DNA of 64,000 nucleotides from Octopus sinensis (lineage: Eukaryota), in assembly GCF_006345805.1 (NCBI RefSeq), contig NC_043001.1, positions 25,668,001-25,732,000 on the forward strand, in the 5' to 3' direction. Positions 985-40,213 of the stretch are shown here, one piece after another. Position numbers and translations under genes: made by a program. The notes under the pieces were generated by a model. It searched no databases. It had not been told where the DNA came from and saw nothing but the letters and a program-made list of their open reading frames with translations. The number at the start of each line of letters is the position of its first letter. Within the stretch, counting starts at the first letter, position 1.

Positions 985-3900
985 TCATCTGTCGCTATCA
1001 CTATAAGTCCTTTTCTTACCCGTTCCTTTAAAAAAAACAAAACATGAAACAAAAATAAAATTGTTTTGACAATATTGCAATTAGGAAATAAATACTCAAT
1101 TATCTATCTCAAACTTCAAACTAAAATGCAAAACGAAAAAAAAAAAAAAAAAAAAATGGTTTATATACCAATACTGTTTCGTCCGCCACTATAACCTCTG
1201 TTTCGACCATAGCTGCTGCCGTAACCACCACCACCACTGCCGTAGCTTCCGCCGCCACCATAACCACCACCACCACCACCGTAGCCTCCACCGCTACTGT
1301 AGCCTCCACCACTACGTCTACTGCCATAGCCACCTCCGCCATAGCCACCACCACCACCACCGTAGCCACCACCACCACCATAGCCACCGCTACCATAACC
1401 ACCACTTCGGCCACCATAACCACCACTGCGACCTCCATAACCGCCGCCGCCGCCGCCACCACCACCGTAGCCACCGCCACCATAACCTCCACTGCGTCCA
1501 CCATAACCGCCACTGCGTCTTCCACCAGCATAACCTGCAAATAAAGTTAAAAATTCAGAAAACCATAGCTGTTGACTTTCATGAACAGGATTTCATCATA
1601 CTTATATTGGAACTAATAAAAACAAAAAATGAATTAGCCATCAACATTTCCCTGTGTAGACCCGACACCATAAATGACAACTTTATACTTAGACACCTAA
1701 ACTTATAAAGGTCTAATTATTTAAATATAATTTTAGTAATATGCAATATAGCCGAAAAGCTGCAGAAAAAATCCCGATAGACAATATTGCATTATACTGA
1801 ACACTTTGCCTATCACGTGTGTTACTGGTGATTCCCACAGTACAGAATTGATATAATATTTATTCTGTACTGCGGGAGTCACCAGTGACACTCCTGCTAT
1901 ACATCAATGTGGTAAGTTTATATAATGAACTGGAACATATACATATTACGGAGATGTACTTGCATAGCAAGTGATTTGATCTGAGATCGTGAGCTGGAAC
2001 AAAAACAATTGCAGCATGGAAGGTGTTTGTAAGCCATTTAAGAAACACACAAAAGCCGTTCGATTCACTTCAACATTTAAGTTTAATTTGTCAAAATATT
2101 TTTGTCAGTGAACAGGTTGCGGTCTTATAGCAACGAAAATATTTTGACAAATAAAACTTAAATGTTGAAGTGAATCGAACGGCTTTTGTGTGTTTCTTAA
2201 ATGGCTTACAAACACCTTCCACGCTGCAACATATACATAGTTAAAAAGAAATGTTTAAATTTATAATGAAACGAGGTTGCTGGTGCAAAAAGAAAATATG
2301 ACATGAAATGGGTTTGGTAGGCCAAGTGTCAGTCAATTTTACTCAAATGCACCTCATACATGATTGGTTTCTCCTCTTTTAAAATATCTGACAGAATGTA
2401 CTTTAACCCTTTAGCATTTAAACCGGCCATATCTGGCCAAAAGTATTCTGCCTGTTTTATGTTCAAAATGGCCAGATCTGGTCTCTCACACCAACCCTAC
2501 AATATCATTTTAAGAATTAACAGCTACCTCATCAAAATCTCAAAGCTACAAGATAATGCATGATTAGTTCAAAACAATGTGGATGAAAAAGCATTAATTT
2601 TGGCAGATTAATGCGGACACTAAAGGGTTAATATTTCATTCACAATAGGTCCTAACAAAATGAGATAAAATCAAAAGCTACTGTACCTCGATTTCTGCCA
2701 TCGTTGTCACCTCTGTTTCTTGCAAAACAGCAGGAAACAGTTCTGCCATCAATATCAGTACCATCATATTTGTTCAAAGCACTTTTGGCTTTTGATACAG
2801 ATTCAAATTCCACAAACGCAATTCTAAAATAAAAATTTTAAAAGATGGAAAATTCCACTTTGAAAATAATTCATTATACCAAAATCAAACAAAAAAATAC
2901 ACTATATCATGAACAAATGTTAACTTGCTTATAAATAACAAAGTCATTTTACACACCCTTTTGGTTTTCCTGAATCTGAAAATATTGGCATTCGTACAGC
3001 AGTAACATCTCTGAAATATGATCGCAAAGAATCTTCTGTTGTCTCATAGGATAGATTTCTCACTAGTAGCACATTGGATTCTTCAGGTTGATCTTAAATT
3101 GACAAAGAGGAAAGAAAATACATACATTAAAATTAAGTTAATTCAAAGTAAATCATTTAATTTCAATCCAAATTTCTATCAAATGAAAGTTTAATAAAGG
3201 AAATAAAATTACCATCTCTAAAACCTCTCCTTTGCCGTGAAGTACCTCCTGCATAGTCTAAGAACAATTTTCGGTCCCCACATTCGGTCCCCTGTTTGTT
3301 TTCAACGGCATCCTTTACTTCTTCAGCAGTATCAAACTCAACATAGGCAAACCTGAAGAAACAAAAACACACATATTACATTTAGGAAAAAATGTTTTTT
3401 ATATAAAACTTGCTTGTACCAACCCTTACTAGTTAAATTAATGTGCTTTTACATTTGCTAAATGAAAAAATTTGTATTGCAAAACACATCTGATACTACT
3501 GAAAAGAGAATATCTAAATATGTGACTGTCTAACTGGTAAGCATAATTTCAATAAAACCATCTCTGTAAACTTACCCTCTATGTGTATCTCTCTTGCATG
3601 GAATTCGGACATTTCGTGCATCAGGAAATATTTCCATCAGACTGTTCCTAATACTCTCTTCTGAATCATCATAGGACAAGTTCTTCACAAACAGTGATTT
3701 TGAATCATCTGAAAAAAACAAAACAAGAGTTTATAACTGAAATTATATTGTTCAGAGAACAGGAAAGGGCATTTTGTATAATTAACTCAAATGGTAACAG
3801 TGTATCTGAGACAACTCAAGTTTATCTATTCATACTGAAATCAAAATATTGATGTAAATTATTACTGCATTAGTATTAACTATTTCACTAGACAAACACT

Positions 3901-6900
3901 TGCCATGTACTGTCTGGCATTCTTATAATATGAATTGTATTCTCTAATTTTTTCTAAATCTTTATCTTCCTCTTATCTCCATAATGTATTATCCCTTTTA
4001 AAACTTTATAAGCTTCAGGTTTAGAAATAAAGAACCTGAAATTGAACAATTTTTGGAATGCAGTAGATAAAAAAAAAAAATGTAGCAAACATAGCACATG
4101 ACAGGTTGAACCAGATGCTTCAAATTACAAGGGTTTAAATAATGTCAGGCAGCAGTAGTGAATGCAATGATATCCAGAGTGAAACTTAAAATATTTCTCT
4201 TCCAAATTTTTTTAGAAGAAACCAGACTTCAGTCGGTTTTCTCAAAACTAAAAAAAAAACCCCACTGATTATTCACTTTACTTTATTCCATTTAAAAAGC
4301 TACATAGAATAACAGCAAAGATTAACTGCTATGCAAAACACAGCAATACATTTAATGGATAGAGCTTGTATATTGTCATACAAAGCCAGTCTAAACTCAC
4401 AAATATTTTAGAATTACATTCATACTCAGAGAGAACATAAACATACCCTTATCTCTGTCTGTTCTTTCTGGTTTTGATGCCCCCATGGGCTTACCCTTCT
4501 CAAATATCAATATAGATCCTTTATATTCCATATCCTGCATGGCTAGGACTGCATCAAGGTCATCAGGATTAGCTAAGTCGATATGTGCAAACCTATAAAA
4601 GAAGAATACAAAAAATAAAAAATGAATGATAAAGAAGTAGTGAAAAGCACAGAAAAACAGGCATAAAATGGGTAATAAATAAATCTAATACACACTTTTT
4701 ATTGTCTTGTTTACGGACAGATGCAAATTCAATTCCTTTCTTCTTAAGAAATTTCTCAAATTTCTCAGCAGTCACTTCCTGGGGAACATTTCTACACAGA
4801 ACTGTCACTGGTTCTATAATGGATTAGAAAAAGTATTATATTCAGTCTTCATAACTTAAAATCATTACTCATATGGAAAACATTTTAAATTAATCTCCAA
4901 CAACAAAAACTAATACATATTCTCAGGAGACAAAAATACACTTTTATTTACATTTCAACAACAATGCTGGGGGATTTTAATGGCATCGTACAAATATACA
5001 ACCCCTCAGCATAGGTTACTCAGTAGTGAGTTCAAGGTACAGGCATGAAAGAAACCAAGAAGCAAGCCAGTTTGGAAAAGAAGGATATGGAAGCTTAAGG
5101 ATCCTTTGAATAGTTAGAGATTTAGAGACATCCTAACTGAAACATTTAATGAGAAATAGGAGTTGCAGACTTGGGACAGTTTATTACTGGAAGTTCCTGC
5201 AAGGCAACTTGCTGAGAGCCACAGACCAAATTTATGGTTAGTGCAAAATCCCAACCAGACCTAGGTTAATGTGGTGATGGAACAGTGTAGTTGACAGGGC
5301 CATTAGAACAAAGAAACAGGCTTAGAAGGACTGGAAGTGTGGTGGTAGCAAGAAGCTACATCAGGCAGCTAGGAGGCAGGTATACTTAGCCAGGGGTGAA
5401 GCAGAAAGGAAAAAGCTTGCCAACGTTATGTAGCATAAGGGCCAGCAGCTTGAAGTGCTTTGGCTTGCATTGCAAGTCAGTGTGCCAGGGAAAATTGTGA
5501 TATTGTTGGAGAGAAGTGTATTCACATGGATGATGGTTCACATGCAACGAAAGAGGTTTGAAAGTGCCACTATGAAAGGCTACTAAATGTAGCAAACTTT
5601 CAGGAGGAGGATAGTCTACCTACTGTGGATACAACAGAGGGACCAGCAATCCAAATAGAGAGGAGCATGATAGATAAAGCCATGAAGAATATGAAGACTA
5701 GAAAAGCCCCCAACCTTTCAGGAATCACTGTTGAGATGCTTAAAATATCTGGCAGTATGGGTTATGGCTTAATCACCAGTATAGTTAATCAGGTTGTACA
5801 TGAGGGAGTCATACCTAAAGACTGGTGTAGCAGAATCATAGCCAACTGCTACAAAAATAAAGGTGATGCCTAAGACAAATAATTACAGAGAGGGTCATAG
5901 CCCAACTAATTAGGAAGAGAGTTAGTCTAGATAAGATGCAGTTTGATTTTGTGCCAGGGAGGAGCACCACCGGTGCTATATTTCTGGTAAGGTAGCTGCA
6001 GAAGTACCAATCCAAAAATAAACCTCTATACTTGACTTTTGTTGACATAGAGAAAGCTTTCAACAGGGACCCCTGCTCCCTTATCTGGTGACCAATGCAT
6101 AAACTAAGGATAGATGAGTGGTTGGTGAGAGCTGTACAAACTATGTACAGGGATGCTGTCAGTAAGGCGATGATTGACAACAAGTAATAGCAATGAATTC
6201 AGAGTACAAGTAGGGGTTCACCAAGGATTGGTGCTTAGCACCCTCTTGTTCATCATAGTCCTCTAGGCAATAACAGAGGAATTTAAGTCAGGCTGCTGAT
6301 GACCTTGTTCTTATAGCTGACTCACTACCAGAACTAGAAAAGAAATTTCGGATGTGGAAGCAAAGTCTAGAATCAAAGGGCCTTAGAGTTAATTTAGTAA
6401 AAACCAAAGTCTTAGTAAGTAGAAAAGAGGACAAATTACAAATCCCTTCAGGTAGATGGCCCTGCTCAATATGTAGAAAAGATGCAGGTAGAAACACTGT
6501 AAGATGTACCTGGTGCAAGCTATGGATACACAAGAGGTGCAGCAATATCAGAAGAAGGTTAACAGGGAAAATAGTATTTGTGCATGGCAGGTGCACCAGT
6601 ACAATAGACACTAAAAGTGTACAGAAAATAGATTCCATCAAATGGCAGGTGGGGGGTACCTAGAAGTAATTGATAGTTTCCCCTATCTAGATGACCAAGT
6701 CAGCAGTGGAGGTGGATGCTCCAAGAGCGTAGCTGCTAGAATAAGAATAGGCTGGGCAAAGTTCAGAAAGCTCCTACTTCTTTTGGTAACTAAAAGCCTC
6801 TCCCTCAGAGTAAAAAGCAGATTGTATGATGCTCGTGTGCAAACAGCCATGCTACACAGCAGTGAAATATGGGCTGTGACTGCTGAGGACATGCATGGGC

Positions 6901-9900
6901 TTGAAAGTATTGAAACTAGCATGCTTTTCTGGATGTGCAATATCAGTGTGCATGTATGATAGAGTGTGAACGTCTTGAGTGAAAATTTGGGCATGAAACA
7001 TCAGATGTAGTGTGTAAGAGAGACGACTGTGCTGGTATGGCCATGTGATGCATATGGATGAGGATAATTGTGTAAAGAAGTGCTGATCTCTGTGGAAGAG
7101 GTAGACTCAAGAAGACATGAGATGAGGTGGTGAAGCATGATCTTTGAACATTGGGCCTCACATCATCATTGTTCGACCGTGGTTGAGACAATGGAATTTA
7201 CCATGCTACGCCAGACTTCACAGTCCATCAGAGCATTACGGAGGTCCGGTTGCTGGATGCCTGTATCCCTGGAGATTACATCAGGGTAGGAGAGTGTGCG
7301 CCCTCACAGAAGCAGTGACAAGTGACCGAGACCTCTGGCGATATGCTGTGCTTGAGAAGAATTGTCAAGTCAAGTCAAGCCAAGTGAAATCATAGTCATG
7401 GCTGATGCTGGTGTCATGTAATTGACACCTGTGCCAGTGGCACATAAAAAGTACCCATTACACTCTTGGAATGGTAGGCATTAGGAAGGGCATCTAACTA
7501 TAGAAACCATGCCAAGTCAGACAGGAACATGGTACAGCGTTCCAGCTTATCAGTTCAAATCAAACTGTCTAACCCATGCCAGCATGGAAAGCAGATGCTA
7601 AATGATGATGATGATGATGAATACAAAGTTTCAAAATCACACAAAAATGCTGATGGATTACCAAAACTTCAGATCCAAGAGTCAATATAAAGAGTACCAG
7701 AATCAGATTTAGTTTACAGGATTGTCAAGTATTGGATGAATTTGATTTACAACCATCATCACCATCATCCTGATTATGAGCCACTGTCATTACTACAATC
7801 CCTGAACAAGGATGTGATACTTGCCATCATAAACAGTCATCATTATTGTTATTTCAAATTACATAATAAAATTTTGTATTATTTTATTGTTGAATGCTAA
7901 ACATAATTTATTATTAATTTGAAATTGCAATCAACCACTGACATACCTGACAATTTAACTATTTTTGTTTTTATTTTTAATTATTCATATATTATTATTG
8001 GCACAAACTGCTGAAGTGAGCACTGCTATATTTCAACATCTTCATTTAATGTCCATTTTCCATGCTGGCATGGGTTGGATGACTTGACAAGAGCTGGCAA
8101 TGCCAAAGGCTGCACCAGATTCCATAATCTGTTTTTGGCTCGGTCTCTATAGCTGGATGCCTTTCCTAATGTAAAACACCTTACAGAGTGCACTCGGTGC
8201 TTTTAAGATGGCACCAGCACTAGTGCTCTTTACATGGCTTAGCTACACATATAAAGTTCCACCATCATATTCCAGGGAATATGATTACTAGAATAATTAT
8301 TGATTCAAAACCTCAACACGTCATTGTTGATGTAAGAGTTAAAACTGAAATTATTTTATTTCTTAGTTGATACAGCCTCAGCCTACTTTCATAACAACCA
8401 AAAAAGATGCCAGCAGTAACTCCACAAACAATGTTGGGTATGAAATCTTTTTTTTATTAAAATACAGTATTTAGAAGTCAACAATACAAAATTTTCTCTA
8501 AGTAGACTTCATCATACACACACACTAATCTTTCAAATTTCAAAGCATCTTACCATCATCAACTTCCTTCTTACGCTTCTTGGCTTCTCTCTCACCTGGT
8601 GTAGTTAAAAAAGAAAGATTCTATTTCAAACTATTTAACAATGGAAACAAAACCATGTGCGTCATAATTATGAAATACTATCAAACATTCATAAACAGAG
8701 AAATTAAAGTATATTCAAATTTAACTTTATGTACAAACTGTACAAATTTATTTATAGTCAGCATATTAAACAGCATTATGTAAACATGTAGCAAACATTT
8801 TGAATATGCAACACCGATTGAATTAGCAAATAAAAAGTGATCAAACTGAGAGAAACTACTGAATAGAGAAAACAAGCTAACAGAAATAACTTACCATTAG
8901 ATTTTCCATTAGCTTTTGAATTAGGGGAATCATCTGGTTCTAAAGCAGAAGATGAGTTTTAGTTAAATATTAGAAAAGAGGGATATTTCTCAGTGATACT
9001 ATCTACCAAGATATAGTTTATTTTATCAGCAATCAGAATAAAAGACCATCATATACCTTCATTAGAATTTTCCTCGTTAGAATTCTCTTCATCAGAATGA
9101 CCTGACTCAGCAGCCGGTGTAGTATTTTTTACTGCTGCTTCCTCCTCCTCCTCCTCATCTTCCTCTGCCTCCTCACCTTCATTGCTCTCACTCTCCTCAT
9201 CTTCAACACTTCTCTTCCCATCTGCCTCACTGTCGCCAGATTCTTCATCTCCTTTTGCTGCATACAAAACAAAGACAGACAACATTGAAGACTGAATCAG
9301 TATAATGTATTCAAGGCAAAAAATCCACTGTCTTACAATACTGGTATCACTTTTAAACTACAACAGTCTACAAAGTAATGCATTGTATTTCACATATCAA
9401 AACACATTGATATGATTTACAACAGCCATATTCCTACCACTCTATGTCACGCTGGTGAGACCCATATTGGAGTACGGGATTCAAGCCTCTACTCCTTATT
9501 TCCTCAAAGACATACATCATCTTGAAAGAGTCCAGAAGCTGGCTACTCGCATGGTTCTTGGTCTCAAGCATTTGTCTTATGAAGAAAGGCTGAAGACACC
9601 CGACCTTTATTCTCTTGAAAAACGCCGCCGCTGTGGTGATCTCATTCTCGCTCACAACATCATAAGCGGGAAGTGTAACCTCTTGAAAGAGCTGTTCTTC
9701 ACACCTGCTCTAGAGTGTGGGCTGCGGGGTCACTCCTAAAAGCTCTATCTACAACAATTTCATCTCAATCGAAGGAGAGGGGCTTTCTCCGTCCGGGTTG
9801 CAGATCCGCGGAATAAGCTGCCGGATGAGATAGTGAAGATGCCGACGACTGCTCGGTTCAAAGTCTCTCTTGACCAGAAATGGCCTGAACTCTTTGTATG

Positions 9901-19297: not shown

Positions 19298-19480
19298 TTC
19301 ACTTTGTTTTCTGGGATAATATACCGAATAAAAAGTTCAGCTGCTATGAATGTTCTCTGTAACTGTAGCTCGAAGCTGTACGTACACTTTTCTTAGCAGT
19401 GGCAAGGTATAGCCACCACCATGTAGTTTCGTATCTATTGAATAAATGTCTCCAGCATTTGATTCTATAATTAATTTTAA
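19298..19480 (-). promoter_or_regulatory. 5' UTR / proximal promoter of copy A
   Basis: Alignable with 24040-24207: both share CCAGAAAACAAAGTGAAATG and ATACGAAACTA...GTGGCTA. The TSS cannot be determined from sequence. Confidence 0.5.
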
Positions 19481-20004
19481 TTTTATTACCATTTATTGCT
19501 GGATAATAAAAGCTGAGGTTATTTCATTGAACCCTTTACTCAGTGTAAATATATTTATTGAAAATCTACTGGAGTGATATCAAATTACGAGAGGTAAAAT
19601 GGGCGCTAACTGGGTAAAATGTCGTAAATCAAGAAATAGTAATTAAATAAGTAAAATTATTTTCTTCATTGTCCTTAGCGACGAGTAAAGAAAATAATTA
19701 CAATAAAACAAATGACTAATGAAAATAAAAGGACCGGGAGACAACCCTGGAAATTTGATAAATTAAAATTAATTGAATATTGAATGCAATGAAGAGTGAG
19801 CTAGTACTATGACAACTCTGAACATGTTTTAATATTATTAGACCTCATCAGTGAAGCAGGAATTAACCATAACATCATCTTACAAAGACTGGGGAGAGTA
19901 TAGGATTTCAAAGAATTAACACTAAGGGATTGAGATAATTTGAAACAATGACTTGAAAAATACATAAATACACTTGCTACAGTAAAAGACAGGGGACGGA
20001 GGCA

Positions 20005-20210
20005 GATAATAGCTTGGCAGAAACGTTAGCATGCTTAGCGGTATTTTGTCTGTCTTTACGTTCTGAGTTCAAATTCCGTCGAGGTCGACTTTGCCTTTCA
20101 TTCTTCAGGGGTCAATAAATTTAGCAGCTGTTGCCTACTGGAGTCGATCTAATCAACTGCCCCCCTTCCCCAACATTTCAGGCCTTGTGCCTAGAGTAGA
20201 CAAGATTATT
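20005..20210 (+). mobile_element. tRNA-derived SINE (GGCAGAAACGTTAGC family)
   Basis: GAGTTCAAATTCC B-box-like motif followed by GAGGTCGACTTTGCCTTTCATC. Further copies at about 25455-25860, 29800-29990, 47770-47935 (-), 57490-57690 (-) and 59860-60110 (-). Confidence 0.75.
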
Positions 20211-21134: not shown

Positions 21135-21540
21135 ATCATCATTAAACGTCCGCTTTCCATGCTAGCATGGGTTGGACGAATGACTGAGGGCTGGTGAACC
21201 AGATGGCTGCACCAGGCTTCAATCTTGATCTGGCAGAGTTTCTACAGCTGGATGCCCTTCCTAACGCCAACCACTCCAAGAGTGTAGTGGGTGCTTTTTA
21301 TGTGCCACCGGCACGGGAGCCAATCAGGCAGAACTGGCATCAACCATGTTCAGATGGTGCTTTTTACAGGCCACCGGTATGGGGAGCCAGTCAGGCGGAA
21401 CTATGGGGCCAGTCAGGCAGTACTGGCAACGACCTCACTTGAATCTTTTACACATGTCACCGGCACAGGTGCCAGTAAGGTGATGCTGGTAACGATAATG
21501 CTTGATTAGTGTCTTTTACGTGCCACCGGCACGGAGGCCG
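21135..21540 (-). mobile_element. RTE-type 3' tail
   Basis: Same tail motif and stem-loop units; another copy at about 22190-22510. Confidence 0.75.
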
Positions 21541-24039: not shown

Positions 24040-24207
24040 ACAAAATCAAATTCTGGAGATATTTAATCAGTAAATACGAAACTATATCGTAGTGGCTACG
24101 CCATAAAGTGAATTAGACTGTGCGCACGTATTCATTCTTCTTTTACAGAGAAAATTCAGAGCAAGTGAAAATTTTGTTCGATATAATATTCCAGAAAACA
24201 AAGTGAA
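24040..24207 (+). promoter_or_regulatory. 5' UTR / proximal promoter of copy B
   Basis: Homologous to the copy A upstream region. The pyrimidine run TTCATTCTTCTTTTACAG (24131-24148) could be a TCT/TOP-like start or a splice acceptor. Confidence 0.5.
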
Positions 24208-29996: not shown

Positions 29997-30038
<42 letters not shown>

Positions 30039-30222
30039 CATTTCTGAATTAGCCCAAAGGCTGACAGTATACTCAGTTGATTTCAATTAATTGTATACAT
30101 AACCTGAGTATCCTTCTGCCACTACTTCTGTACCAATGTTGGTATTTGTTTATAATTGCTGTGCATGCATTTTAATTCAGACCTAACCTGGTGCCTTACC
30201 TTTAAGTGCCTTATTCATCTGA

Positions 30223-30259
<37 letters not shown>

Positions 30260-33200
30260 GATATGCATATATATCTTGCAGACTCATATACAGAGATGTA
30301 TTAAATGAGTTGAGGCAGCAAATTGCCTTGCAGTCTCTCCAATACTCTAATGTATTTATTCTGTCTTCTGTGCATTCATCATCATCATCGTTTAACATCC
30401 CTTTTCCATGATGGCATGGGTTGGATGGTTCGACTGGGGTCTGGGAAGCCAGGAGGCTGCACCAGGCCCCAATCTGATCTGGTAGTGTTTCTACAGCTGG
30501 ATGCCCTTCCTAATGCCAACCACTCCGAGAGTGTAGTGGATGCTTTTTATGTGCCACCAGCACAGAGACCAGAGGAGCTGGCATTGATCATGATCAGATG
30601 TGCTTTTTACATGCCACCGGCATGGAAGCCAGTCAAAGCAGCACAGGCATTGGCCACATTTGGATGGTGCTTTTTATGTGCTACCAGCAAGGGGGTCACA
30701 ACTACAATTTCCATTTGATACTGATATTGATGTACTTGACTCAATAGGTCTCCTCATGCACAGCATGTTGCCCTACGATCCAAGGTACTTTTGAGTGCCT
30801 CGATCTTTTGTCATTGCCTCTGTGAGGCCCAATGTTCGAAGGTCATGCCTCACTACCTCATCCCAGCGTGGCCGCAGTCAAATGACTGTAACAAATAAAA
30901 GAATAAGAGAAAATGGAATATCTGCTTTGGAAATGTCAGTTTTATTTTACTTATGTTTAATCTGCAGCTGCAAGTTGCATGTCAAAAGCAGTTTTAGAAA
31001 ATATGAAATTTTAACTTGTGAATTTGCAGTTTACAATAGTGATGCTTCAAATAAAAATTTTAAATATGCTTAAGGAAAAAAATATTGCTTATTTTTAGGT
31101 AGCTCCTGTTATGAAAACTAAGAAGCTGACAAAAAGCAAAGAGACACCTGGTAAGGCTTGATGAGTATTATCCAAATATAATAATGATTTTTTTATTTGT
31201 TGTTACACTAAGGAAGTAGTGTGGAAATGAAAAGCTGTCAAAGGATAGAGAGTGACTGAGGGTAGAAGTAAAATGAAAATGAGTGGAAAGATGAGCTGTT
31301 TCTCTGTTACATTTGACTGGATTATTAAATGGGAAAAGTTAGCAAGAGAATTTAATTGAGAATGGGTTAGAGTAAGAAATGTAACAAAAGGTTAGTGAGT
31401 ATCTTTCACAGTTGGGGTTTCATTGACAAAGGGCTTGAATGAATATGTGTATATCAAAAGTTTTAGTCTTTTAGAATTTAAACTGGCCACATTTGCCTCA
31501 AATATTTCTACCCATTTTATGTTCAAACCAGCCAAATCTGGCCTTTCACACCTATCCTACAATGTCATTCTAAAAATGAACAATCACATCATTGAATTCT
31601 TGAAGCATGATTAATTTAAAATAATGTGAATAAAACAAGCATTACATTTCACAATAATTTGAATGTTAAAGGGTTGACATCCACTTTTCTATCTTTGCCT
31701 GAAGTAGATGAAATTCAATGCAGACATTGTACAGCTGAATGCACATCCTGTTGCTAACACTGGCTTGCTTTCAACAAGGTGTGTCTATAGGGGTGAAAGT
31801 CAAGATTTCATTGAGTTTTTCCCATATCTAGGTTTTTCAAATAATCTGGATTTGCTGTGTATTTGATTTTTTATTTGTGAAATGTGTTCTACTTATAGTG
31901 GAGGCGCAATGGCCCAGTGGTTAGGGCAGCGGACTCGCAGTCGTAGGATCGCGGTTTCGATTCCCAGACTGGGCGTTGCGAGCGTTTATTGAGCGAAAAC
32001 ACCTAAAAGCTCCACGAGGCTCCGGCAGGGATGGTGGTGATCCCTGCTGTACTCTTTCACCACAACTTTCTCTCACTCTTACTTCCTGTTTCTGTTGTAC
32101 CTGTATTTCAAAGGGTCGGCCTTGTCACTCTCTGTGTCACGCTGAATATCCCCGAGAACTACGTTAAGGGTACACGTGTCTGTGGAGTGCTCAGCCACTT
32201 ACACGTTAATTTCACGAGCAGGCTGTTCTGTTGATCGGATCAACCGGAACCCTCATCGTCGTAACCGACGGAGTGCTTCCATCCATCTACTTATAGTTGT
32301 TTATAGTCTTGTGATTTGTGAGTGATATAAGAAGTCCAAGGCAGAATAATTTACTCTATATTGGACTTGATGTATACATTGAAGAAATTAAAATTTTTCT
32401 ACCTTGAATAGATTATACTGCTTTATTCTTTCATTAACAACTTACTTTTGTTTTGCATGTAGCTAAGAAGGTAGAATCTAGTGACAGTGAGGAAGAAGAG
32501 GAAGAAAGCAGTGAGGATGAGGAAAGTGACAGTGAGGAAGGGGAAGAAGAAGAGGAGGAGGAGGAAGATGAAGAAGATGATGATGAGGAAGAAGAAAAGG
32601 CAAAGGTGAAAAAACCTGTAGCAGCTGCTGAATCTAGTGACTCTGATGAAGAAGAGGATTCTAGTGAAGAAGAAACTAGTGAAGGTATACAGCCTTTTTT
32701 AGTCAGTTAATAATTGATAACGAATTAAGATGTCTTGGTAAATAATTTCACTAGCAAGTGTTTCTCTTTTATTAAACTAAAACATAACATCTCTGCTTTA
32801 AAATTTAGATGATGCTCCTAAATCAAAGGCCATTGAAAAAACAAATGATAAACAGAAAGATGGTGAGTATTTTCAAATTGTTTTTGATATTCTGCCAATC
32901 TGTGGTTTCTTCTAGTATTTTTAATTTATTCAGTTTTTCCTTGCTAAATAACATTCAGAATGTTTGATACATTATCTTGGTTTCTTATTACATTTTTAGA
33001 TCACTCGATTTCATATATTTATCTGTAAATCATTGCATGTGATTCTTATATGAAGTTTCCTTTATTTATGGCTTAATTTCTCTATTTACGAATGTTTAAC
33101 CCTTTAGTATTTAAACCGGCCATATCCGGCCAAAACAGTTAATCTGCTTTATGTTCAAACTGACCAGATCCAGGCTCTCACACCTACCTTACAATGTTAT

Positions 33201-36200
33201 TCTACATTAAGTAATTACACCATCAAGATATTGAAGATATGAGATAATGCATGATTAATTCAAATCAATGGGAATCAATAGGCATTATGTTTGATGGAAT
33301 AATCTGAACGCTAAAGGGTTAATAATGTTTCATAACTGCTACATAGACTGTTGTTTCTATTTATTAACTAGTTACAAATAGAATATTAATGATACTAGAT
33401 ATACTGGTAAGATCTTTTCAATTTTTGTCTACAACAGGGTCAAAAGAGGCCAAGAAGCGTAAAAAGGAAACGGATGATGGTAAAAATGCCAAAAAAGCTA
33501 AAGTTGATGGTAAGGAAATTTGAATTTCGAAAGTTTAACGTATGCGTGTTCAAACCAACTAGTGAATATGTATATATTGACTATTTTTGTATATAAATAA
33601 GAATCACTATGAATATTTGAAAAATTTAAATCTAATTCTTGGAGAGAATCCAAAAAGAAACATTTTGATACCTAATTTGTGAAATTTAGATGAATATATA
33701 TGACAATTTGAATGGTCAGCAAATTGGTCAATACCTTGCTTAATTAGGTTTAAATTAATTAGCCATATTTGTGAGGTCATATCTTTGAAACTGAGGTGAT
33801 AATATCTTCAAATTACACAGATTAATAGTGTTCATGGGATAGCAGTTGCCTGCTTTTTTGGGGGGCAATTTTTGAAATATTTATGTAAAGTCTATTTTGT
33901 TGCATGTAACAAACAGTCAATTTCAGATCTAGCTAAATCCAAAAGTACAAGCCATGGGGACTTGAATTTTGGGACGTGATAGCATTCCAATAAAATTTTA
34001 GTGGCCTATTAAAATTGGCTACAAACAGTGGAGTTTCATATTAGAACCTTTTGACAGGGATTTTTCCAATTTTAAAAAATATATTTTACCACAGCCTTGG
34101 AAATGATGGGGTGAAGCTTTTTATGAAAAAAAAATTTTGGAAAGTTTGTGGGTTTTTTCTTCCCCTTACCCTTCATTCCCCCCTTTTTTTTTTTACACTA
34201 TGAACTTGAAAAGGATAGAAGGAGCCTTTTCAGTAGAAAAAAAAAACGTTCTTGAAAATATTTTCAAACAAAAAAGCATTTAAACCGGCCATATCCGGCC
34301 AAAAGTATTCTGCCTGTTTTATGTTCAAACTGGCCAGATCTGGTCTCTCACACCAACCCTACAATATCATTTTAAAAATTAACAGCTACCTCATCAAAAT
34401 CTCATAGCTACAAGATAATGCATGATTAGTTCAAAACAATGTGGATGAAGAAGCATTAATTGTGGCAGAATAATGCGAACACTAAAGGGTTAAGGGAGAA
34501 TTAACTGTTGCTTCTAACACATCCCACAGCCACCTGGTACCTTCCTCGTTTCTTTGTCACTCTGACATATATTGATGTCTTTCAATAGTTTTTCTCTTCA
34601 TAAACACATTTTATTGATTAATATGAAAGAACACAAGAGTTTTTTTTAACCAAGGGTAGTTCTTGCTGAGATTTAAGCAATCAAAAAAAAAGAAAAGAAA
34701 CACACACACCTTTACACCTAGCAGTTTTTTTTCTTAATAAATCTGTTCTTTCTTACACATACATATGGATAGCTAGTCAGACTGGTGTTTGACAAGTAGT
34801 ATCAGTATGCATTAATCCTATATGGGCAGTCATGGTAGTCCCCTTTGTATTGACTTCGCCTTTTTGCACCATTTCATAGTCAGATTCACCAATGGCTGTA
34901 TTGAATTTGTGAGAAACTTTTCTTTCTTATTACATAAAAATCTTGAAGAAAATATGTTCTTTTCTAACAGTAAAATTTTCACTTTTGTATTTCATAAGGA
35001 TTACCTGACCTACCTCCAGCAATTTTTTCAGTAAAATAAAGCAAAAGTCTCCTTCATGGCTGTATCATTTTCAACACAAATCAAGTTATAGTGCTCAAAT
35101 GCATTGAACTTGAACAAGGTCTAGCATTCAGCAGTCAGAAACAAAAAGTGGGACAAACATTGTGAATGGGCTGAAATATGATTGTAATTGAGGGGACCTG
35201 CCATAATAGGGAAGTGTCAGATTTTGAGGAAAAGTATACGAGAAGAAAGTTCACGCCCAGAACTTTTGAATGGTATAAAGCTGTCAGTAGGAAAAAATGT
35301 ATTTTGACATCAGGCAAAGCATGTTTTTGTGTAGTCAAACTCAATGGGTTGAAATATGATTGTAATTGAGGGGACCTGCCATAATAGGGAAGTGTCAGAT
35401 TTTGAGGAAAAGTATACGAGAAGAAAGTTCACGCCCAGAACTTTCGAATGGTATAAAGCTGTCAGTAGGAAAAAATGTATTTTGACATCAGGCAAAAGCA
35501 TGTTTTTGTGTAGTCAAGCTGTGCTTGTCTCCCTTCTATGGAGCTCTGCAGTGATACCTAATATAAGCTCTTTTTGATTTTTTTTATTCATAGAAATTGT
35601 AATAAAATATGAGTTGATTATTTACTGCTGTTCATTATTTACTGCTGACTATATCATTGGTTATTAAAGTAAGCTAGTATTGAGTCTTTATTTTTTTAAT
35701 CTTCCTTTTCAGAACCTGTTACTGTTCTGTGCAGAAATGTTCCCCAGGAAGTGACCATTGAGAAGCTTGAGAAATTTCTTAAGAAGAAGGGAATTGCATT
35801 TACATCTGTTCGCAAGCGTAATGACAGAATGTATGTATTACAATAGTTTATTAGCCATTTTACATTTCGTGTCCTTTTCTCTACTTTATCCTCATTCGTT
35901 TTTATTGCTTTCTGTTATAGGTTTGCCCACATTGACTTAGCTAATCCTGATGATCTTGATACAGTTTTAGCAATGAAAAATCTTGAATATAAAGGGTCTA
36001 TGTTGGCATTTGAAAAAGGTAGACCCTTAGGGGCATCAAAACCAGAAAGGAGCAAGGGTATGTTGATTTGTTTTCCTGAATTTTTTTTTTTTCTTTTAAT
36101 TGCACAAGATGTCCTGTTGTGGTGATTCACTGAACACTGCAAATTTCAGTTGAAGTTGATGAACTTTCTTTTTCTCTTCCCCTTCTACAGAGGATGATTC

Positions 36201-39200
36201 AAAATCCCTGTTTGTGAAGAATTTGTCCTTCGATGATTCAGAAGATAGTATCAGGAACAATCTGATGGAGATATTCCCTGATGCACAAAATGTTAGAATT
36301 CCATTCAGGGGGAATGCACATAGAGGGTAAGCTTTATTGAATTGCTTATCAATTAGAGAATCATATGTTTGGGTGTTCTTGTTTTGTCATATTAGATAAA
36401 GGTCTTTGCAGTAGTTTTGCAAAAAGCGACTAGATTTTAATAGTTCAAATAAGAAAGGGCTTGTCAAAAATTTTAGAAACGAGAGGGTTCCCATGTGCAA
36501 GGCTTAACTCAAACTATTTATAATATTAGTAAAACTACTGCGTATGTTTTTGTCTCATTATTATTATTATTTTTTTTTTTTACACCTAGGTTTGCCTACA
36601 TTGAGTTTAGTAGTGCTGAAGAAGTAAAGGATGCTGTTGAAAATAAACAAGGGGTTGAGTGTGGGGACCAAAAATTGTTCTTGGATTATGCAAGTGGTTC
36701 TTCAAAAAACAGAAGACGTGGCTTTAATGGTAATTTTTGCTTTTTTTTTTTTGTATTTGTATTTGTTAGGGATTCGGATTGAAACTAACTCAAGTTAGTG
36801 TGTGCATTAATATCCTATCATATGTCTGTTTTCCATGCTGGCATGGGTTCAACAGTTTAATCGGAGCTGGTAAGCCAGAGAGCCCCACCAGGCTCCAGTC
36901 ACCTGTTTTGGGTTGGTTTCTATGGCTGGATATCCTTCCTAATGCCAACTACTTCACAGAGTGTACTGGGTGCCTTTTACATTTTACCAGCATGGGTAAC
37001 TTGCAAGGCAAAGGCCCCTTGGTTGAGAGAGGGAGTGAATCAAGGGGATTAATGTGCCAGACAGGAGGTTGGAGTATGATGGAAGGACAGAGGTAGTCAT
37101 CTTACTAAGAGGAATTATCTGGCTATCCTAGTAGGAGAAGGGAGTTAGGAGAGAGAAATAGATGGTGTGGTGATGTATTGGAGTTTATCCACAGGGGAAA
37201 GTGGAGGGGAGTATAGGTTGTGCAGAGGGGATAGAGAGGGATGTTCCATGTGAGTGTGAGGGTATATGTTTGGGGATGAGGAAGACATGACTGTAGTAAG
37301 TGATAATGAGGGAAATTAGAGTGGTTGGGAAAGAGGTAGGGAAGGTATGTGAGGCATGGGGAGCATGTAGACAGACACATGAGAGAGTGGAGGGGCCTGC
37401 AGCATGTGAGGTGCATGAGGGAGGAGTCTGGTGGCAGTTTGACAGAAGTTGGGTATTGTGTGGGTGTGGGGTGGGGATATGGCTGAAAAGGACATGCGTG
37501 CATATGTGGATAACCTCAAATTCACTTGGCTTGTGTCTTCTCAAGCAGGAAAATTGCCAGAAGTCTCAGTCTCTTGTCATCTCCTCTAAGAGGCTCCATC
37601 TCACTTCACATCTTCTTGGGTTCCTTGCACAGTTAGGGATCAGTACTTCTTTATGCAGCTGTTCTCATCCATACCAGCACACTCTTCTGTCTTGCACACT
37701 ACATCTGATGCCTCTCATAGCCACTACACACACATACACACACTTGATTTTTTTTTTATATTTTAGATCAACCTGAAGAATCCAGTGTGCTGTTAATTAG
37801 AAATCTATCCTATGATTCAACAGAGGATTCTTTGCGATCATATTTCAAAGATGCTACTGATGTACGAATACCAATGTATTCAGATACTGGAAAGCTAAAG
37901 GGGTATGTAAAGATAGCTGCTGCATCGCTTAGGATGTTTTTAATTTCTGGCTGATCATTTGTATGTTTTCCTTTTTAACATCAGTTATGTTTGTTGATTG
38001 CTCTTGAAAAAGGACATTTATTTATTTTGTTTAGAATTGCTTTTGTGGAATTTGAATCTGCATCAAAAGCTAAAAGTGCTTTAAACAAACATGATGACTC
38101 TAACATTGATGGCAGAACTGTTCGATGTTGCTTTGCTAGAAACAGGGGTGATGGTGATGGAAGAAGTAGTGGAGGTACAGTAACTTTTGATTTACTTCAT
38201 TTTGTTAGAGTGGATTGTGACATCTGACACAATCTGATTGTATAGGGTGTTGGTCTGAAATATTTTAAATATTGGTATATTTTACTCTCTTATACTTGTT
38301 TCGGTCATTTGACTGCGGCCATGCTGGAGCACCGCCTTTAGTCGAGCAAATCGACCCCGGGACTTATTCTTTGTAAGCCCAGTACTTATTCTATCGGTCT
38401 CTTTTTGCCGAACCGCTAAGTGACGGGGACGTAAACACACCAGCATCGGTTGTCAAGCAATGCTAGGAGGACAAACACAGACACACAAACACACACACAT
38501 ACATATGTATATATACGACAGGCTTCTTTCAGTTTCCGTCTACCAAATCCACTCACAAGGCATTGGTTGGCCCGGGGCTATAACAGAAGACACTTGCCCA
38601 AGATGCCACGCAGTGGGACTGAACCCGGAACCATGTGGTTGGTTAGCAAGCTACTTACCACACAGCCACTCCTGCGCCTATTTTATTTAACCCTTTAACG
38701 ATCGGATTACTTTGTCAAATGTAATGCTTATTTACTCACACTGTTTTCAATTAATTATGTGTTACCTTGTAGCTTTGAGATTTTGATGATATAAATGTAT
38801 ATTTTAAGAATGATATCATAGGGTACGTGTGAGAGTTGAGAGCTGGCTGGTTTGAGCATAAAACAGGTAGAATATTTGAGCCAGTTAGGGCCGGTTTAAA
38901 TGCTAAAGGGTTGTGTTCTTACTTCAGCTTTTATGCAGTAAACATGTTAAAATTATATTCAGATAATTGAACTTCTAATTTCTTTGTACCTCTAAATATT
39001 GACATTGAGCTCATCACTACAGTCAGGTGTTAATAGACAATTCTTTTTTCGAGACCAACAAAGATATTTGCTGACTGTTTTGTTAACGTCTGGCTGTTTT
39101 AATTAGTTTTGAGGTGTCTATGAGAAATTCTTTTCATGACCGTCATAATATTGTTTAGTGGCTAGTTCAGTTATTTTTTTTATCACACTTTAACCTTTAA

Positions 39201-40213
39201 GTCCTTTTATTACCATATTTCTGTTAAATCACACTGACTTTGTTTTAATTATTTTTGAAAATAATGAATTTATTAAGATAACTTTGTCAGGCGTGGATTT
39301 ATGGTAAAAAGTTTGCTTCCAAACCTGGGTTCAGTTCCACTGTGTGTCACTTTGGGCAAGTATCTTCTACTATAGCCTCAGGGCAACCAAAGCCTTGTGA
39401 ATGGATTTTTGTAGATAGAAACTGAAAGAAGCTTGTCGTATGTGTGTATGTGTGCATTTGTACCCCACCAGTTAACTAGTGTTAGTGTGTTTACACCCTG
39501 TAACTTAGCAGTTCGGCATAAGAGATTAATAGAATAAGTACTAGGTTTTAAAAAAAAGATGTCCTAGAGTCAATTCATTTGACTAAAATTCTTCAAATTG
39601 ATGCCCCAGGATGGCCACTGTCTAATGACAAACAAGTAAAAGACAAATGATTATTATTAAGTTAATGTATGGAATATAAATTGACATGAAATTTTGATGC
39701 AAAGTTTAATTTAAAACAAGAAATTTCTATCATAGAACCAAGGTCAGTTTTAGGTGGATTTGTATTAAAAAAAGGTTAAGCCTTGTATAAACCAGATAAT
39801 TAATAGATTGTTTTCAGGAGTTAAGACGTGTGATTTTCTTAGTTTGAAATTTGATTGTGCAGGTTACAGTGGTAGACATAGTGGCGGAGGTTACGGAGGA
39901 CGTCGTGGTGGTGGTGGCGGTGGCGGTTATGGCAGACGTGGTGGTGGTGGTAGTGGTAGTGGTGGTGGTGGTAGTGGTGGAGGTGGCAGACGTTTTGGTG
40001 GTGGAGGACGAAGTAGCTTTGGAGGTATGTAAGGCCTTTTTTCTTTCTTTTTTCTTTTCTTTTGTTTTTGATCTTGTGTTTTGTATTTGAAGTTTGAGAT
40101 AAATAAATGAATATTAATTTACTTGTGATATTTTCTAAACAATTTTTTTTTTTTTTGCTTGTTTGTTTTTTAAAGGAACCGGGAAGAAAAAGACTTTCAG
40201 TGACAGCGACTGA
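24208..40213 (+). CDS. NCL: Nucleolin-like protein, copy B (14 exons, about 502 aa: acidic domain, bipartite NLS, 3 RRMs, GAR tail)
   Basis: Exons, all GT-AG and phase-compatible: 24208-24228, 29543-29623, 31099-31150, 32463-32684, 32809-32862, 33438-33509, 35713-35830, 35921-36057, 36191-36326, 36590-36729, 37767-37902, 38035-38174, 39863-40024, 40176-40213 (1509 nt). Motifs MAAKKNKTPKK, TPAKK, poly-E/D, KKRKKETDDGKNAKKAK, RGFAYIEF, KGIAFVEF and GKKKTFSDSD-stop. Confidence 0.92.
24920..25425 (+). other. Highly conserved non-coding block, copy B intron 1
   Basis: Counterpart of 17935-18470, in the same orientation and position relative to exon 1. Confidence 0.9.
25455..25860 (+). mobile_element. 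Young tRNA-derived SINE with internal tandem duplication
   Basis: The body from GTATTTCGTCTGC to AAAGAAATA occurs twice (about 25514-25677 and 25678-25856); CpGs are intact. Confidence 0.8.
26283..28941. mobile_element. Non-autonomous foldback / long-TIR element in copy B intron 1
   Basis: Termini GGCATAACTACA...TGTAGTTATGCC, with about 150 bp or more of inverted similarity. Flanked by GTTGCTGT/ATTGCTAT (possible 8-bp TSD). Absent at the homologous site of copy A. A related fragment lies at about 34040-34260. Confidence 0.7.
29999..30030. repeat. (TA)n microsatellite
   Basis: Pure TA run. Others at about 30225-30252, 53034-53067 and 53213-53268; (CA)n at about 21917-21941 and 62453-62490. 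Confidence 0.95.
30375..30830 (-). mobile_element. RTE-type 3' end
   Basis: (CAT)n, tail motif and stem-loop units, then the end of the RT ORF (VVRHDLRTLGLTEAMTKDRG-like on the minus strand). Confidence 0.75.
31897..32285 (+). mobile_element. tRNA-derived SINE with intact Pol III boxes
   Basis: A box TGGCCCAGTGG and B box GGTTTCGATTCCC, followed by about 300 bp of non-tRNA body. A related head lies at about 41755-41825 (-). Confidence 0.8.
35165..35518. repeat. Near-perfect 178-bp tandem duplication in copy B intron 6
   Basis: 35165-35342 is repeated at 35343-35518 with only a few differences. Confidence 0.92.
38280..38680 (-). mobile_element. tRNA-derived SINE with CORE-like domain
   Basis: The minus strand reads GGCTGTGTGGTAAG...GGTTCAGTCCCACTGCGTGGCATCTTGGGCAAGTGTCTTC. 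Copies at about 39285-39640 (+), 40700-41030 (+), 43370-43590 (-), 49190-49530 (-), 56815-57130 (-), 57915-58035 (-) and 62290-62430 (-). Confidence 0.8.

What the first reader, a model, noticed from the sequence alone, without database searches (positions are those of the whole stretch)
985..40213. Head-to-head inverted pair of intact nucleolin paralogs
Two complete 14-exon genes with identical intron phases and no frameshifts diverge from a 4.9-kb spacer (ATGs at 19297 and 24208). Many synonymous and non-synonymous differences plus independent TE insertions show an old, retained duplication rather than an assembly artefact. Nucleolin is generally regarded as single-copy in animals that lack whole-genome duplication. 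Retention with coordinated changes in three regulatory modules (tail, NLS, phospho-sites) suggests sub- or neofunctionalisation.
Basis: partly seen in the sequence, partly recalled or inferred. Interest (0 to 1): 0.7.

Follow-up and report, generated by a model that had tools for sequence, protein, structure and literature searches.

The report
Diverged octopus nucleolin gene pair
Two intact, long-diverged copies of the nucleolar RNA-binding gene nucleolin sit head-to-head in the Octopus sinensis genome; they belong to a three-gene cluster shared by octopuses and argonauts, and one copy has rebuilt its regulatory ends while keeping its RNA-binding core.

Summary
The window is from Octopus sinensis chromosome CM016863.1. 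It holds two 14-exon, GT-AG, phase-identical nucleolin genes with start codons at 19297 (-) and 24208 (+) and stops at 985 and 40213.

The right copy (R, 502 aa) is identical to RefSeq "nucleolin isoform X2". The left copy (L, 548-aa model) also lies under a called gene.

The pair is old. The same head-to-head arrangement exists in O. vulgaris, O. bimaculoides and Argonauta hians. Trees place L and R orthologues in separate clades. Both copies are under purifying selection: Octopus-Argonauta dN/dS is 0.10-0.15 in the RNA-binding domains (RRMs) and 0.14-0.22 overall.

It lies tail-to-tail with L, about 9.7 kb left of the window. All three arose in the octopod lineage after its split from the one cuttlefish sequence sampled.

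L is the derived copy:
- It has half the N-terminal lysines.
- It keeps only the first basic cluster of the nuclear localisation signal.
- Its tail is 145 aa, Gly/Tyr-rich and without RGG motifs.
- These traits are shared with Argonauta L, while the RRMs evolve symmetrically in L and R.

Functional divergence is inferred and expression is untested. This is a lineage-specific expansion of a known gene, already annotated, and of moderate interest. A highly conserved intron-1 element shared by all three paralogues is an unexplained extra.

The parts
24208..40213 (+). R gene (canonical-like nucleolin paralogue), coding part, 502 aa. Exons: 24208-24228, 29543-29623, 31099-31150, 32463-32684, 32809-32862, 33438-33509, 35713-35830, 35921-36057, 36191-36326, 36590-36729, 37767-37902, 38035-38174, 39863-40024, 40176-40213.
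   Evidence: All introns are GT-AG and the translation has no stops. The model is identical to RefSeq XP_029636667.1. Pfam finds RRM_1.
985..19297 (-). L gene (derived nucleolin paralogue), coding part, 548-aa model. Exons: 19297-19277, 16606-16535, 11141-11087, 9257-9057, 8933-8895, 8595-8554, 4813-4696, 4592-4447, 3708-3576, 3352-3213, 3092-2957, 2823-2687, 1534-1169, 1025-985.
   Evidence: All introns are GT-AG with the same phases as R. Pfam finds three RRM_1 stretches. A called gene ends at 985. The orthologue Argonauta P0004 has the same 14-exon layout.
19465..24043 (.). Non-homologous spacer between the two copies, mostly transposon-derived. SINE-like copies lie at 21131-21539 and 22195-22492, and another repeat at 20014-20167.
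   Evidence: Repeat matches elsewhere in the window. The middle 2.7 kb is absent from O. bimaculoides, where the start codons are about 2.3 kb apart.
24044..24207 (+). R promoter-proximal / 5'UTR segment that was duplicated with the gene.
   Evidence: The whole aligned block 24044-24328 vs 19464-19176, which includes this segment, is 76% identical.
19298..19464 (-). L promoter-proximal / 5'UTR segment that was duplicated with the gene.
   Evidence: Conservation with Argonauta L starts about 25 nt upstream of the ATG.
33438..33509 (+). R exon 6: bipartite nuclear localisation signal, KKRKK...AKKAKV.
8554..8595 (-). L exon 6: 30 nt shorter, keeps only the KKRKK cluster.
   Evidence: In Argonauta L the second basic cluster is replaced by an acidic run.
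31099..31150 (+). R exon 3, Lys-rich.
11087..11141 (-). L exon 3: same phases as in R, with most lysines lost (1 of 18 residues, against 6 of 17 in R exon 3).
39863..40024 (+). R exon 13: short Gly/Arg tail. The whole tail is 77 aa with 2 RGG motifs.
1169..1534 (-). L exon 13: long Gly/Tyr/Ser tail. The whole tail is 145 aa with 24 GGY/YGG motifs and 0 RGG.
   Evidence: The Argonauta L tail has the same character.
40176..40213 (+). R exon 14: conserved C-terminal peptide GTGKKKTFSDSD.
985..1025 (-). L exon 14: GTGKKRTYSDSDR.
40214..40481 (+). R 3'UTR segment homologous to the L 3'UTR. This is the distal edge of the duplicated unit.
   Evidence: 706-1321 vs 40481-39872.
706..984 (-). L 3'UTR segment homologous to the R 3'UTR. 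Also conserved with Argonauta L.
24590..25452 (+). R intron-1 conserved block. The core at 25024-25329 is shared by all three paralogues.
17908..18848 (-). L intron-1 conserved block. The core is at 18366-17987.
26083..26174 (+). R intron-1 small conserved block (about 70-nt core).
17597..17689 (-). L intron-1 small conserved block.

Best explanation
The window carries two of three nucleolin paralogues that form an octopod-specific local gene cluster, arranged C(+) then L(-) then R(+).

**Origin (shown).** An ancestral nucleolin gene was duplicated to give C and a second copy. An inverted duplication of about 16-19 kb then produced L and R. That unit ran from about 165 bp upstream of the ATG to about 270 bp past the stop codon. 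Each copy therefore kept its own proximal promoter, and there is no shared bidirectional promoter. Both events happened after the split from the cuttlefish lineage and before Octopodidae and Argonautidae diverged.

**Selection (shown).** All three copies have since been kept by purifying selection. The RNA-binding core (three RRMs) evolves slowly and symmetrically in L and R.

**What changed in L (shown).**
- L lost half of its N-terminal lysines.
- L lost the second basic cluster of the bipartite nuclear localisation signal.
- L replaced the Arg-Gly tail by a doubled Gly/Tyr/Ser tail with no RGG motif.

**Function (inferred).** L binds RNA like a nucleolin but is localised, modified (arginine methylation, lysine-dependent contacts) or partitioned differently. 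R and C retain the canonical nucleolar role. That would be neofunctionalisation or subfunctionalisation of the regulatory modules.
For: - **Gene models and identity to RefSeq:**
- **Nucleolin family:** the best non-cephalopod hits are vertebrate and amphioxus nucleolins. The PDB best hit is nucleolin 9cb5 at E 4e-43. Pfam finds RRM_1.
- **Third paralogue:** P0005 lies at L001 10001-13607. L001 22344-23607 equals window 1-1264, so C ends 8.7 kb left of the window start and is tail-to-tail with L.
- **Same order and orientation elsewhere:** Argonauta hians and O. vulgaris. The head-to-head L/R pair is also present in O. bimaculoides.
- **Exon structure:** all orthologues map exactly with 14 coding exons, except Argonauta C with 13.
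- **Tree (IQ-TREE):** octopod C+L+R 100/100 excluding cuttlefish; L+R 100/98; L orthologues 100/100; R 94/93. The AU test rejects an Octopus-specific L+R clade at p = 1.4e-8.
- **dN/dS:**

| Pair | RRMs | Overall |
|---|---|---|
| O. sinensis L vs Argonauta L | 0.10-0.12 | 0.15-0.19 |
| O. sinensis R vs Argonauta R | 0.13-0.15 | 0.14-0.22 |

- **Relative-rate counts:** in the N-terminus L has 30-45 unique changes against 7-18 in R (p 0.0002-0.009). In the RRMs the counts are 18-23 against 17-21 (p > 0.6). L-specific fixed residues number 12, R-specific 3.
- **Trait table, shared by Octopus and Argonauta L:**

| Trait | L | R | C |
|---|---|---|---|
| N-terminal lysines | 14 | 31-33 | 38-44 |
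| Tail length | 145-146 aa | 52-77 aa | 54-79 aa |
| GGY/YGG motifs in tail | 24-29 | 2-4 | 2-4 |
| RGG motifs in tail | 0 | 0-2 | 3-6 |
Against: - No transcript or protein data could be examined, so expression of L and any difference in expression or localisation are untested.
- The annotated L product is 601 aa in O. sinensis, 602 aa in O. vulgaris and 580 aa in O. bimaculoides. My model is 548 aa and Argonauta L is 552 aa. About 53 residues are unaccounted for, and no plausible extra exon was found.
- Only one decapodiform sequence (cuttlefish) was available to bound the age of the duplications.
- Argonauta C falls outside Octopus C + L + R in the rooted tree (98/95). Simple orthology does not predict this.
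- Disordered N-terminal and tail regions evolve fast in general, so part of L's change could be neutral.
Confidence: 0.8

Rival explanations
1. Redundant dosage duplicates. L, R and C all do the canonical nucleolin job and are kept for dosage. L's altered N-terminus and tail are neutral drift in disordered regions.
For: - The RRMs evolve symmetrically and under similar constraint in L and R.
- All three paralogues keep the same intron-1 element, which suggests shared regulation.
- Disordered regions are generally labile (established knowledge).
Against: - L-specific traits are shared by Octopus and Argonauta L: lysine depletion, a monopartite nuclear localisation signal, and a Gly/Tyr tail without RGG.
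- The L tail itself has dN/dS of about 0.12 over 132 aligned codons (NG86).
- The asymmetry is concentrated in the N-terminal domain and is significant.
Confidence: 0.15
2. One copy (L) is a decaying or unexpressed pseudogene that merely still looks intact.
For: - The L protein was not returned by the protein searches, although an Argonauta orthologue was.
- L carries more transposon insertions and longer introns.
Against: - The 14-exon reading frame is intact, with canonical splice sites.
- dN/dS is 0.10-0.19 against the Argonauta orthologue.
- Genes are called at the locus in four species, with products of 552-602 aa.
Confidence: 0.03
3. Assembly artefact, or a very recent species-specific duplication homogenised or diverged by chance.
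For: Inverted repeats are a known mis-assembly pattern (general knowledge).
Against: - 30% of aligned amino acids differ and dS is 0.68-0.80.
- The introns hold different transposons.
- The same arrangement is present in four independent assemblies.
- The AU test rejects an Octopus-only origin at p = 1.4e-8.
Confidence: 0.01
4. The genes belong to another RRM family (for example RBM19/MRD1, hnRNP, or a PABP-like protein) and are mis-named nucleolin.
For: - There are only three RRMs, against four in vertebrate nucleolin.
- RRM1 is degenerate. It falls below the reporting threshold in R, where Pfam reports 2 stretches against 3 in L.
- Weaker hits to RBM19 and MRD1 exist.
Against: - Nucleolins are the top hits by a margin of 20-30 orders of magnitude.
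- The tree places them with mollusc, amphioxus and vertebrate nucleolins.
- The full architecture is present: acidic/basic N-terminus, nuclear localisation signal, RRMs, Gly-rich tail, and a short lysine-rich C-terminal end that I recall human nucleolin also having (the human comparison is from memory, not tested).
Confidence: 0.01

Closest known systems
Vertebrate nucleolin (NCL)
   Same: - N-terminal alternating acidic and basic stretches, a nuclear localisation signal, tandem RRMs, a Gly-rich C-terminal tail and a short basic C-terminal end.
- Best sequence and solved-structure matches.
   Different: - Three RRMs here instead of four.
- Three clustered paralogues instead of one gene.
- No Rfam-detectable intronic snoRNAs. 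From my own knowledge, vertebrate NCL hosts U20, U23 and U82.
- The L tail lacks RGG motifs.
Other mollusc nucleolin-like genes (cuttlefish NCL, Mytilus, Mizuhopecten, Haliotis, Sinanodonta)
   Same: Orthologous family at 40-49% identity with the same architecture.
   Different: In the databases searched, these species show one gene with isoforms. Octopods have three genes in a fixed C> <L R> cluster.
Arabidopsis NUC1/NUC2 duplicated nucleolin genes
   Same: A retained nucleolin duplicate with a diverged role. The title 'A duplicated NUCLEOLIN gene with antagonistic activity...' appears in the text or reference lists of 31 held papers. Details come from my own knowledge.
   Different: A plant lineage with two RRMs and an independent duplication. 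The copies are not in an inverted cluster. The divergence described there concerns rDNA chromatin, which was not tested here.
Gly/Tyr-rich low-complexity tails of FET-family and hnRNP-type RNA-binding proteins
   Same: The L tail has the same composition: Gly, Tyr and Ser with sparse Arg. It may work similarly in self-association or condensate partitioning, but this is inference only.
   Different: There is no homology of the tail. The L RRMs are nucleolin-type. FUS and hnRNP A1 match only at E 1e-8 to 1e-9.

Membership tests
Nucleolin | Closest relatives by sequence are nucleolins, and the proteins fall inside the nucleolin clade. | tested here: met
   for both L and R.
Nucleolin | N-terminal domain of acidic Ser/Asp/Glu runs alternating with Lys-rich stretches. 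| tested here: met
   R has 31 Lys, 64 Asp+Glu and 14 SxxE/D sites. L keeps the acidic runs (49 Asp+Glu) but has only 14 Lys.
Nucleolin | Bipartite nuclear localisation signal between the N-terminal domain and the RRMs. | tested here: inconclusive
   R and C have both clusters, KKRKK...AKKAKV. L keeps KKRKK only, in both Octopus and Argonauta. The function of the remaining cluster was not tested.
Nucleolin | Tandem RRM domains (2 in fungi and plants, 4 in vertebrates). | tested here: met
   There are three RRMs, each split over two exons. Pfam RRM_1 scores 1e-28 for R and 2e-35 for L. RNP1 and RNP2 are intact in RRM2 and RRM3 and degenerate in RRM1.
Nucleolin | C-terminal Gly/Arg-rich (RGG) domain. 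| tested here: not met
   This applies to L: 0 RGG motifs and 24-29 GGY/YGG motifs in 145 aa. R is weakly RGG (0-2 motifs). C has 3-6. L is therefore a nucleolin by descent with a non-canonical tail.
Nucleolin | Nucleolar localisation and a role in rRNA transcription and processing. | not testable with these tools
   No expression or localisation data were available.
Divergent gene pair with a shared bidirectional promoter | Start sites less than about 1 kb apart, driven by one promoter region. | tested here: not met
   The start codons are 4.9 kb apart (2.3 kb in O. bimaculoides). Each copy has its own duplicated proximal segment, and the spacer is transposon-rich.
Processed or decaying pseudogene | Loss of introns, frameshifts or stops, or dN/dS near 1. 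| tested here: not met
   14 exons, an intact frame, and dN/dS of 0.10-0.22.

The most novel reading that the evidence does not exclude
L is an octopod innovation: a nucleolin-derived RNA-binding protein that has left the canonical RGG- and lysine-dependent nucleolar role. Its Gly/Tyr tail and monopartite nuclear localisation signal would send it to different condensates or compartments. The three paralogues would remain coupled through a shared intron-1 element, read here as an alternative promoter or first exon giving the isoforms that start at Met32. Gene conversion would keep that element nearly identical between copies.
Probability: 0.2. Interest if true: 0.6.

Novelty: new member of a known kind. 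Interest (0 to 1): 0.35.

Why it matters
Nucleolin is a central, usually single-copy hub of ribosome biogenesis. A stable three-copy cluster with one copy remodelled only in its regulatory ends is a natural experiment. It shows which parts of nucleolin (N-terminal lysines, nuclear localisation signal, RGG tail) can be changed while the RNA-binding core is held fixed.

It also gives cephalopod biologists a clean, datable case of lineage-specific expansion of an RNA-binding protein. No paper in the searched library describes it.

This is an ordinary evolutionary mechanism acting on an already annotated gene. The surprise is modest.

Tried and rejected
1. **Third copy inside the window.** tblastn with the C-type protein hits only L and R. 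C lies outside, to the left.
2. **Intron-hosted snoRNAs, as in vertebrate NCL.** Rfam at gathering score over the whole window gave nothing. Relaxed scans of the conserved intron blocks gave only chance-level hits. No tRNAs were found.
3. **Structured RNA in the intron-1 element.** RNAalifold on 3 and on 7 copies gave weak energy, an unfavourable covariation term and only 3 compensatory pairs.
4. **NF-Y CCAAT boxes in that element.** The ATTGG motifs are intact in Octopus but broken in most Argonauta copies (read). The idea was dropped.
5. **Exonic gene conversion in Octopus.** L-R dS (0.55-0.68) is below the ortholog dS (0.77-0.85). However, Argonauta branches are about 2.5 times longer, which explains the pattern without conversion.
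6. **An extra L exon to explain the 601-aa annotated product.** ORF and splice-aware scans found nothing nucleolin-like. The only candidate of the right size (12829-12668, 162 nt) encodes hydrophobic nonsense.
7. **More decapodiform or Nautilus sequences.** A search with the cuttlefish protein returned none.
8. **Conserved genes downstream of R (40.3-64 kb).** Only transposon-like matches with the Argonauta flank were found.
Full report
**What is in the sequence**

Comparing the left part of the window with the right part gives a colinear, inverted chain of similarity blocks from 706-19464 to 40481-24044. The blocks are 68-87% identical with E-values down to 0. They are separated by stretches with no detectable similarity.

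The blocks correspond to coding exons, about 165 bp upstream of each start codon, about 270 bp of 3'UTR, and two blocks inside intron 1.

I built both gene models by hand on pairwise alignments.
- Each has 14 coding exons, and every intron is GT-AG.
- The intron phases are the same in both copies (0,0,1,1,1,1,2,1,2,1,2,1,1).
- Neither reading frame is interrupted.
- The start codons are at 19297 (-) and 24208 (+). The stops end at 985 and 40213.

Exon 3 is so diverged that it was found only through its splice sites and phase. Exon 14 is a 38-41 nt exon encoding a conserved C-terminal peptide.

**Identity and source**

The right model (R, 502 aa) is identical to RefSeq XP_029636667.1, 'nucleolin isoform X2 [Octopus sinensis]'. 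A fetched locus overlaps the window start at 100% identity. This places the window at CM016863.1:25,668,001-25,732,000. A gene is called on the minus strand ending exactly at window position 985.

Both proteins have the nucleolin layout:
- an N-terminal domain of acidic Ser/Asp/Glu runs and Lys-rich stretches;
- a KKRKK nuclear localisation signal;
- three RRMs, each split over two exons (Pfam RRM_1);
- a Gly-rich tail and a short basic C-terminal end.

The best non-cephalopod relatives are vertebrate and amphioxus nucleolins at E 1e-55 to 1e-59. The best solved structure is nucleolin at E 4e-43. The next RRM family scores 8e-12.

**The pair is part of a trio**

A third paralogue (C; XP_029636317.1, annotated from RRM1 onward) lies on the plus strand. 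It ends 8.7 kb to the left of the window start, about 9.7 kb from the 3' end of L and tail-to-tail with it. Its exon 1 and NLS exon were located further upstream.

The order C(+) L(-) R(+) recurs in Argonauta hians, where the L and R start codons are 4.79 kb apart and C lies 4.5 kb beyond the L 3' end. It also recurs in O. vulgaris.

In O. bimaculoides the L and R first exons are about 2.3 kb apart. The middle 2.7 kb of the O. sinensis spacer is transposon-rich and is absent there.

Exact spliced mapping of the annotated orthologues gives 14 coding exons everywhere. The exception is Argonauta C, which has 13 exons; its 285-nt ninth exon is the size expected if the two exons of the second RRM were joined.

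**Age and order of the duplications**

A maximum-likelihood tree used mollusc, annelid, amphioxus and vertebrate nucleolins as outgroups.

| Grouping | Support |
|---|---|
| All octopod paralogues, excluding the cuttlefish gene | 100/100 |
| L + R | 100/98 |
| O. sinensis L + Argonauta L | 100/100 |
| R orthologues | 94/93 |

Forcing Octopus L with Octopus R is rejected (AU p = 1.4e-8). Both duplications therefore predate the split of Octopodidae and Argonautidae (taxonomy). They postdate the split from the one decapodiform sampled.

Two caveats apply. Only one decapodiform sequence was available. Argonauta C sits outside Octopus C plus L plus R (98/95), which is unexplained.

**Selection**

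| Pair (Octopus vs Argonauta orthologues) | dN/dS in RRMs | dN/dS overall |
|---|---|---|
| L | 0.10-0.12 | 0.15-0.19 |
| R | 0.13-0.15 | 0.14-0.22 |
| C | 0.10-0.16 | 0.07-0.18 |

Neither copy in the window is decaying. L versus R within O. sinensis gives dN 0.18 and dS 0.68-0.80.

**Where the copies differ**

Relative-rate counts used C as the outgroup.

| Region | Unique changes in L | Unique changes in R | p |
|---|---|---|---|
| RRMs | 18-23 | 17-21 | > 0.6 |
| N-terminal domain | 30-45 | 7-18 | 0.0002-0.009 |

L-specific fixed residues outnumber R-specific ones by 12 to 3.

Compositional traits also separate L from R and C.

| Trait | L | R | C |
|---|---|---|---|
| N-terminal lysines | 14 | 31-33 | 38-44 |
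| Second basic cluster of the NLS | absent | present | present |
| Tail length | 145-146 aa | 52-77 aa | 54-79 aa |
| GGY/YGG motifs in tail | 24-29 | 2-4 | 2-4 |
| RGG motifs in tail | 0 | 0-2 | 3-6 |

All of these L traits are shared by Octopus and Argonauta L. They arose on the L stem, whose branch is 0.18-0.21 against 0.04-0.055 for R, and have been kept since.

The 'phospho-site' point is weaker. R has 2-3 TPxK motifs in the three Octopus species and 1 in Argonauta, but C has 0-1, like L.

**Most likely mechanism**

The following is shown:
- An inverted segmental duplication included each gene's proximal promoter.
- The two arms later accumulated transposons independently. L introns hold a Tc1/mariner-like transposase ORF and reverse-transcriptase fragments. 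SINE-like copies sit at non-colinear sites in both genes.
- Both copies have been under long-term purifying selection.
- The regulatory ends of L were remodelled asymmetrically.

The following is inferred. L still binds RNA like a nucleolin. However, it has lost the RGG substrate for arginine methylation and much of its lysine-dependent interaction surface. It has gained a Gly/Tyr low-complexity tail. It is therefore probably localised or partitioned differently from R and C. No expression or localisation data could be examined.

**Novelty**

The genes are already annotated as nucleolin or nucleolin-like in four species. Retained nucleolin duplicates are known in plants (and my own knowledge). 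No paper in the searched library describes the octopod cluster. I rate it a new member of a known kind, of moderate interest.

**Seen in passing: a conserved intron-1 element**

A 320-380 nt core in intron 1 is present in L, R and C of Octopus and in L, R and C of Argonauta. In the window it lies at 25024-25329 in R and 18366-17987 in L.
- It is better conserved than the coding exons. O. sinensis L against Argonauta L is 88.6% identical over 500 nt. L against R within O. sinensis shows only about 15 substitutions in 430 aligned columns, apart from two R-specific deletions of 25 and 6 nt. Exons are 74-86% identical between L and R, apart from exons 1, 3 and 4.
- Apart from one 20-nt gap and a few substitutions, the Argonauta R and C copies are the same across the core. 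The pattern across copies is mosaic, which indicates gene conversion.
- Its indels are not multiples of three, so it is not coding.
- It ends in an invariant sequence that looks like a 5' splice site, followed by a run of T.
- Rfam finds nothing, and there is no covariation support for a structured RNA.
- RefSeq R isoforms X3 and X4 lack residues 1-31 and start at Met32 in exon 2. Some transcripts therefore bypass the exon-1 start codon. An alternative promoter or first exon is a candidate reading, but it is untested.

**Open points**
- The annotated L product (601 aa) is 53 residues longer than my model, and I could not find the extra coding sequence.
- Between O. sinensis and O. bimaculoides, the R RRM exons show dN/dS of about 0.8 with dS of only 0.05. 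That dS is about half the divergence of the spacer. The counts are small and the cause is unknown.

Noticed in passing
outside the window, 8.7-12.3 kb left of position 1 (L001 10001-13607; exon 1 near L001 507, NLS exon at L001 8952-9032): A third nucleolin paralogue (C) with a canonical RGG/FGG tail lies tail-to-tail with L. It is annotated only from RRM1 onward (334 aa) in O. sinensis, but as 508-513 aa in O. bimaculoides and O. vulgaris.
   Followed up: yes
window 25024-25329 (+) and 18366-17987 (-); wider blocks 24590-25452 and 17908-18848; also L001 4287-4649, L002 10740-11620 and 4574-4217, L006 7087-7427: An intron-1 element is shared by all three paralogues in Octopus and Argonauta. 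It is more conserved than the exons, and the mosaic of identities between copies points to gene conversion. It is non-coding. It ends in a sequence that looks like a 5' splice site (GAG|GTAA) followed by a T-run. There is no Rfam match and no covariation support for a structured RNA. It may be an alternative promoter or first exon, which would fit RefSeq isoforms X3 and X4 starting at Met32.
   Followed up: partly
window 26083-26174 (+) and 17597-17689 (-): A second small intron-1 block (about 70-nt core) is conserved between L, R and Argonauta L. There is no Rfam match and its function is unknown.
   Followed up: partly
window 13219-14315 (-), 5625-5873, 6352-6959 and 9455-9739 (+): Transposon ORFs lie inside L introns: a Tc1/mariner-like transposase and reverse-transcriptase-like fragments. 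R has none at colinear positions.
   Followed up: no
window 431-684, 7397-7620, 8029-8235, 11346-11781, 21131-21539, 22195-22492, 30376-30700, 36822-36992, 44034-44336, 54364-54792, 55216-55646, 57692-57879, 61081-61278: An abundant SINE-like repeat family (about 250-300 nt, 70-96% identity between copies) occurs in both orientations throughout the window.
   Followed up: no
window 10491-11075 (and 42678-42898): A tandem array of units about 150 nt long sits in L intron 3, next to exon 3. A related copy lies downstream of R.
   Followed up: no
window 20094-22800 (approx.): The middle 2.7 kb of the L-R spacer is absent from O. bimaculoides, so the spacer was roughly doubled by transposon insertion in the O. 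sinensis / O. vulgaris lineage.
   Followed up: partly
R exons 7-12 (window 35713-38174) compared with L004: Between O. sinensis and O. bimaculoides, the R RRM exons show dN 0.041 and dS 0.053 (dN/dS about 0.8). That dS is about half the 8-10% divergence of the spacer. The counts are small and the cause is unexplained.
   Followed up: partly
L gene, window 985-19297: The databases give the longest L product as 601 aa in O. sinensis, 602 aa in O. vulgaris and 580 aa in O. bimaculoides. In O. bimaculoides the called gene range runs past the R start codon into R intron 1. My 14-exon model is 548 aa and Argonauta L is 552 aa. The extra coding sequence was not found.
   Followed up: partly
R exon 5 (32809-32862) and the exon 3/4 junction (31150 / 32463): O. 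bimaculoides isoform X2 lacks an 18-residue stretch that matches the exon-5 peptide, so exon 5 looks like a cassette exon there. O. sinensis isoforms X1 and X2 differ by one residue at the exon 3/4 junction.
   Followed up: partly
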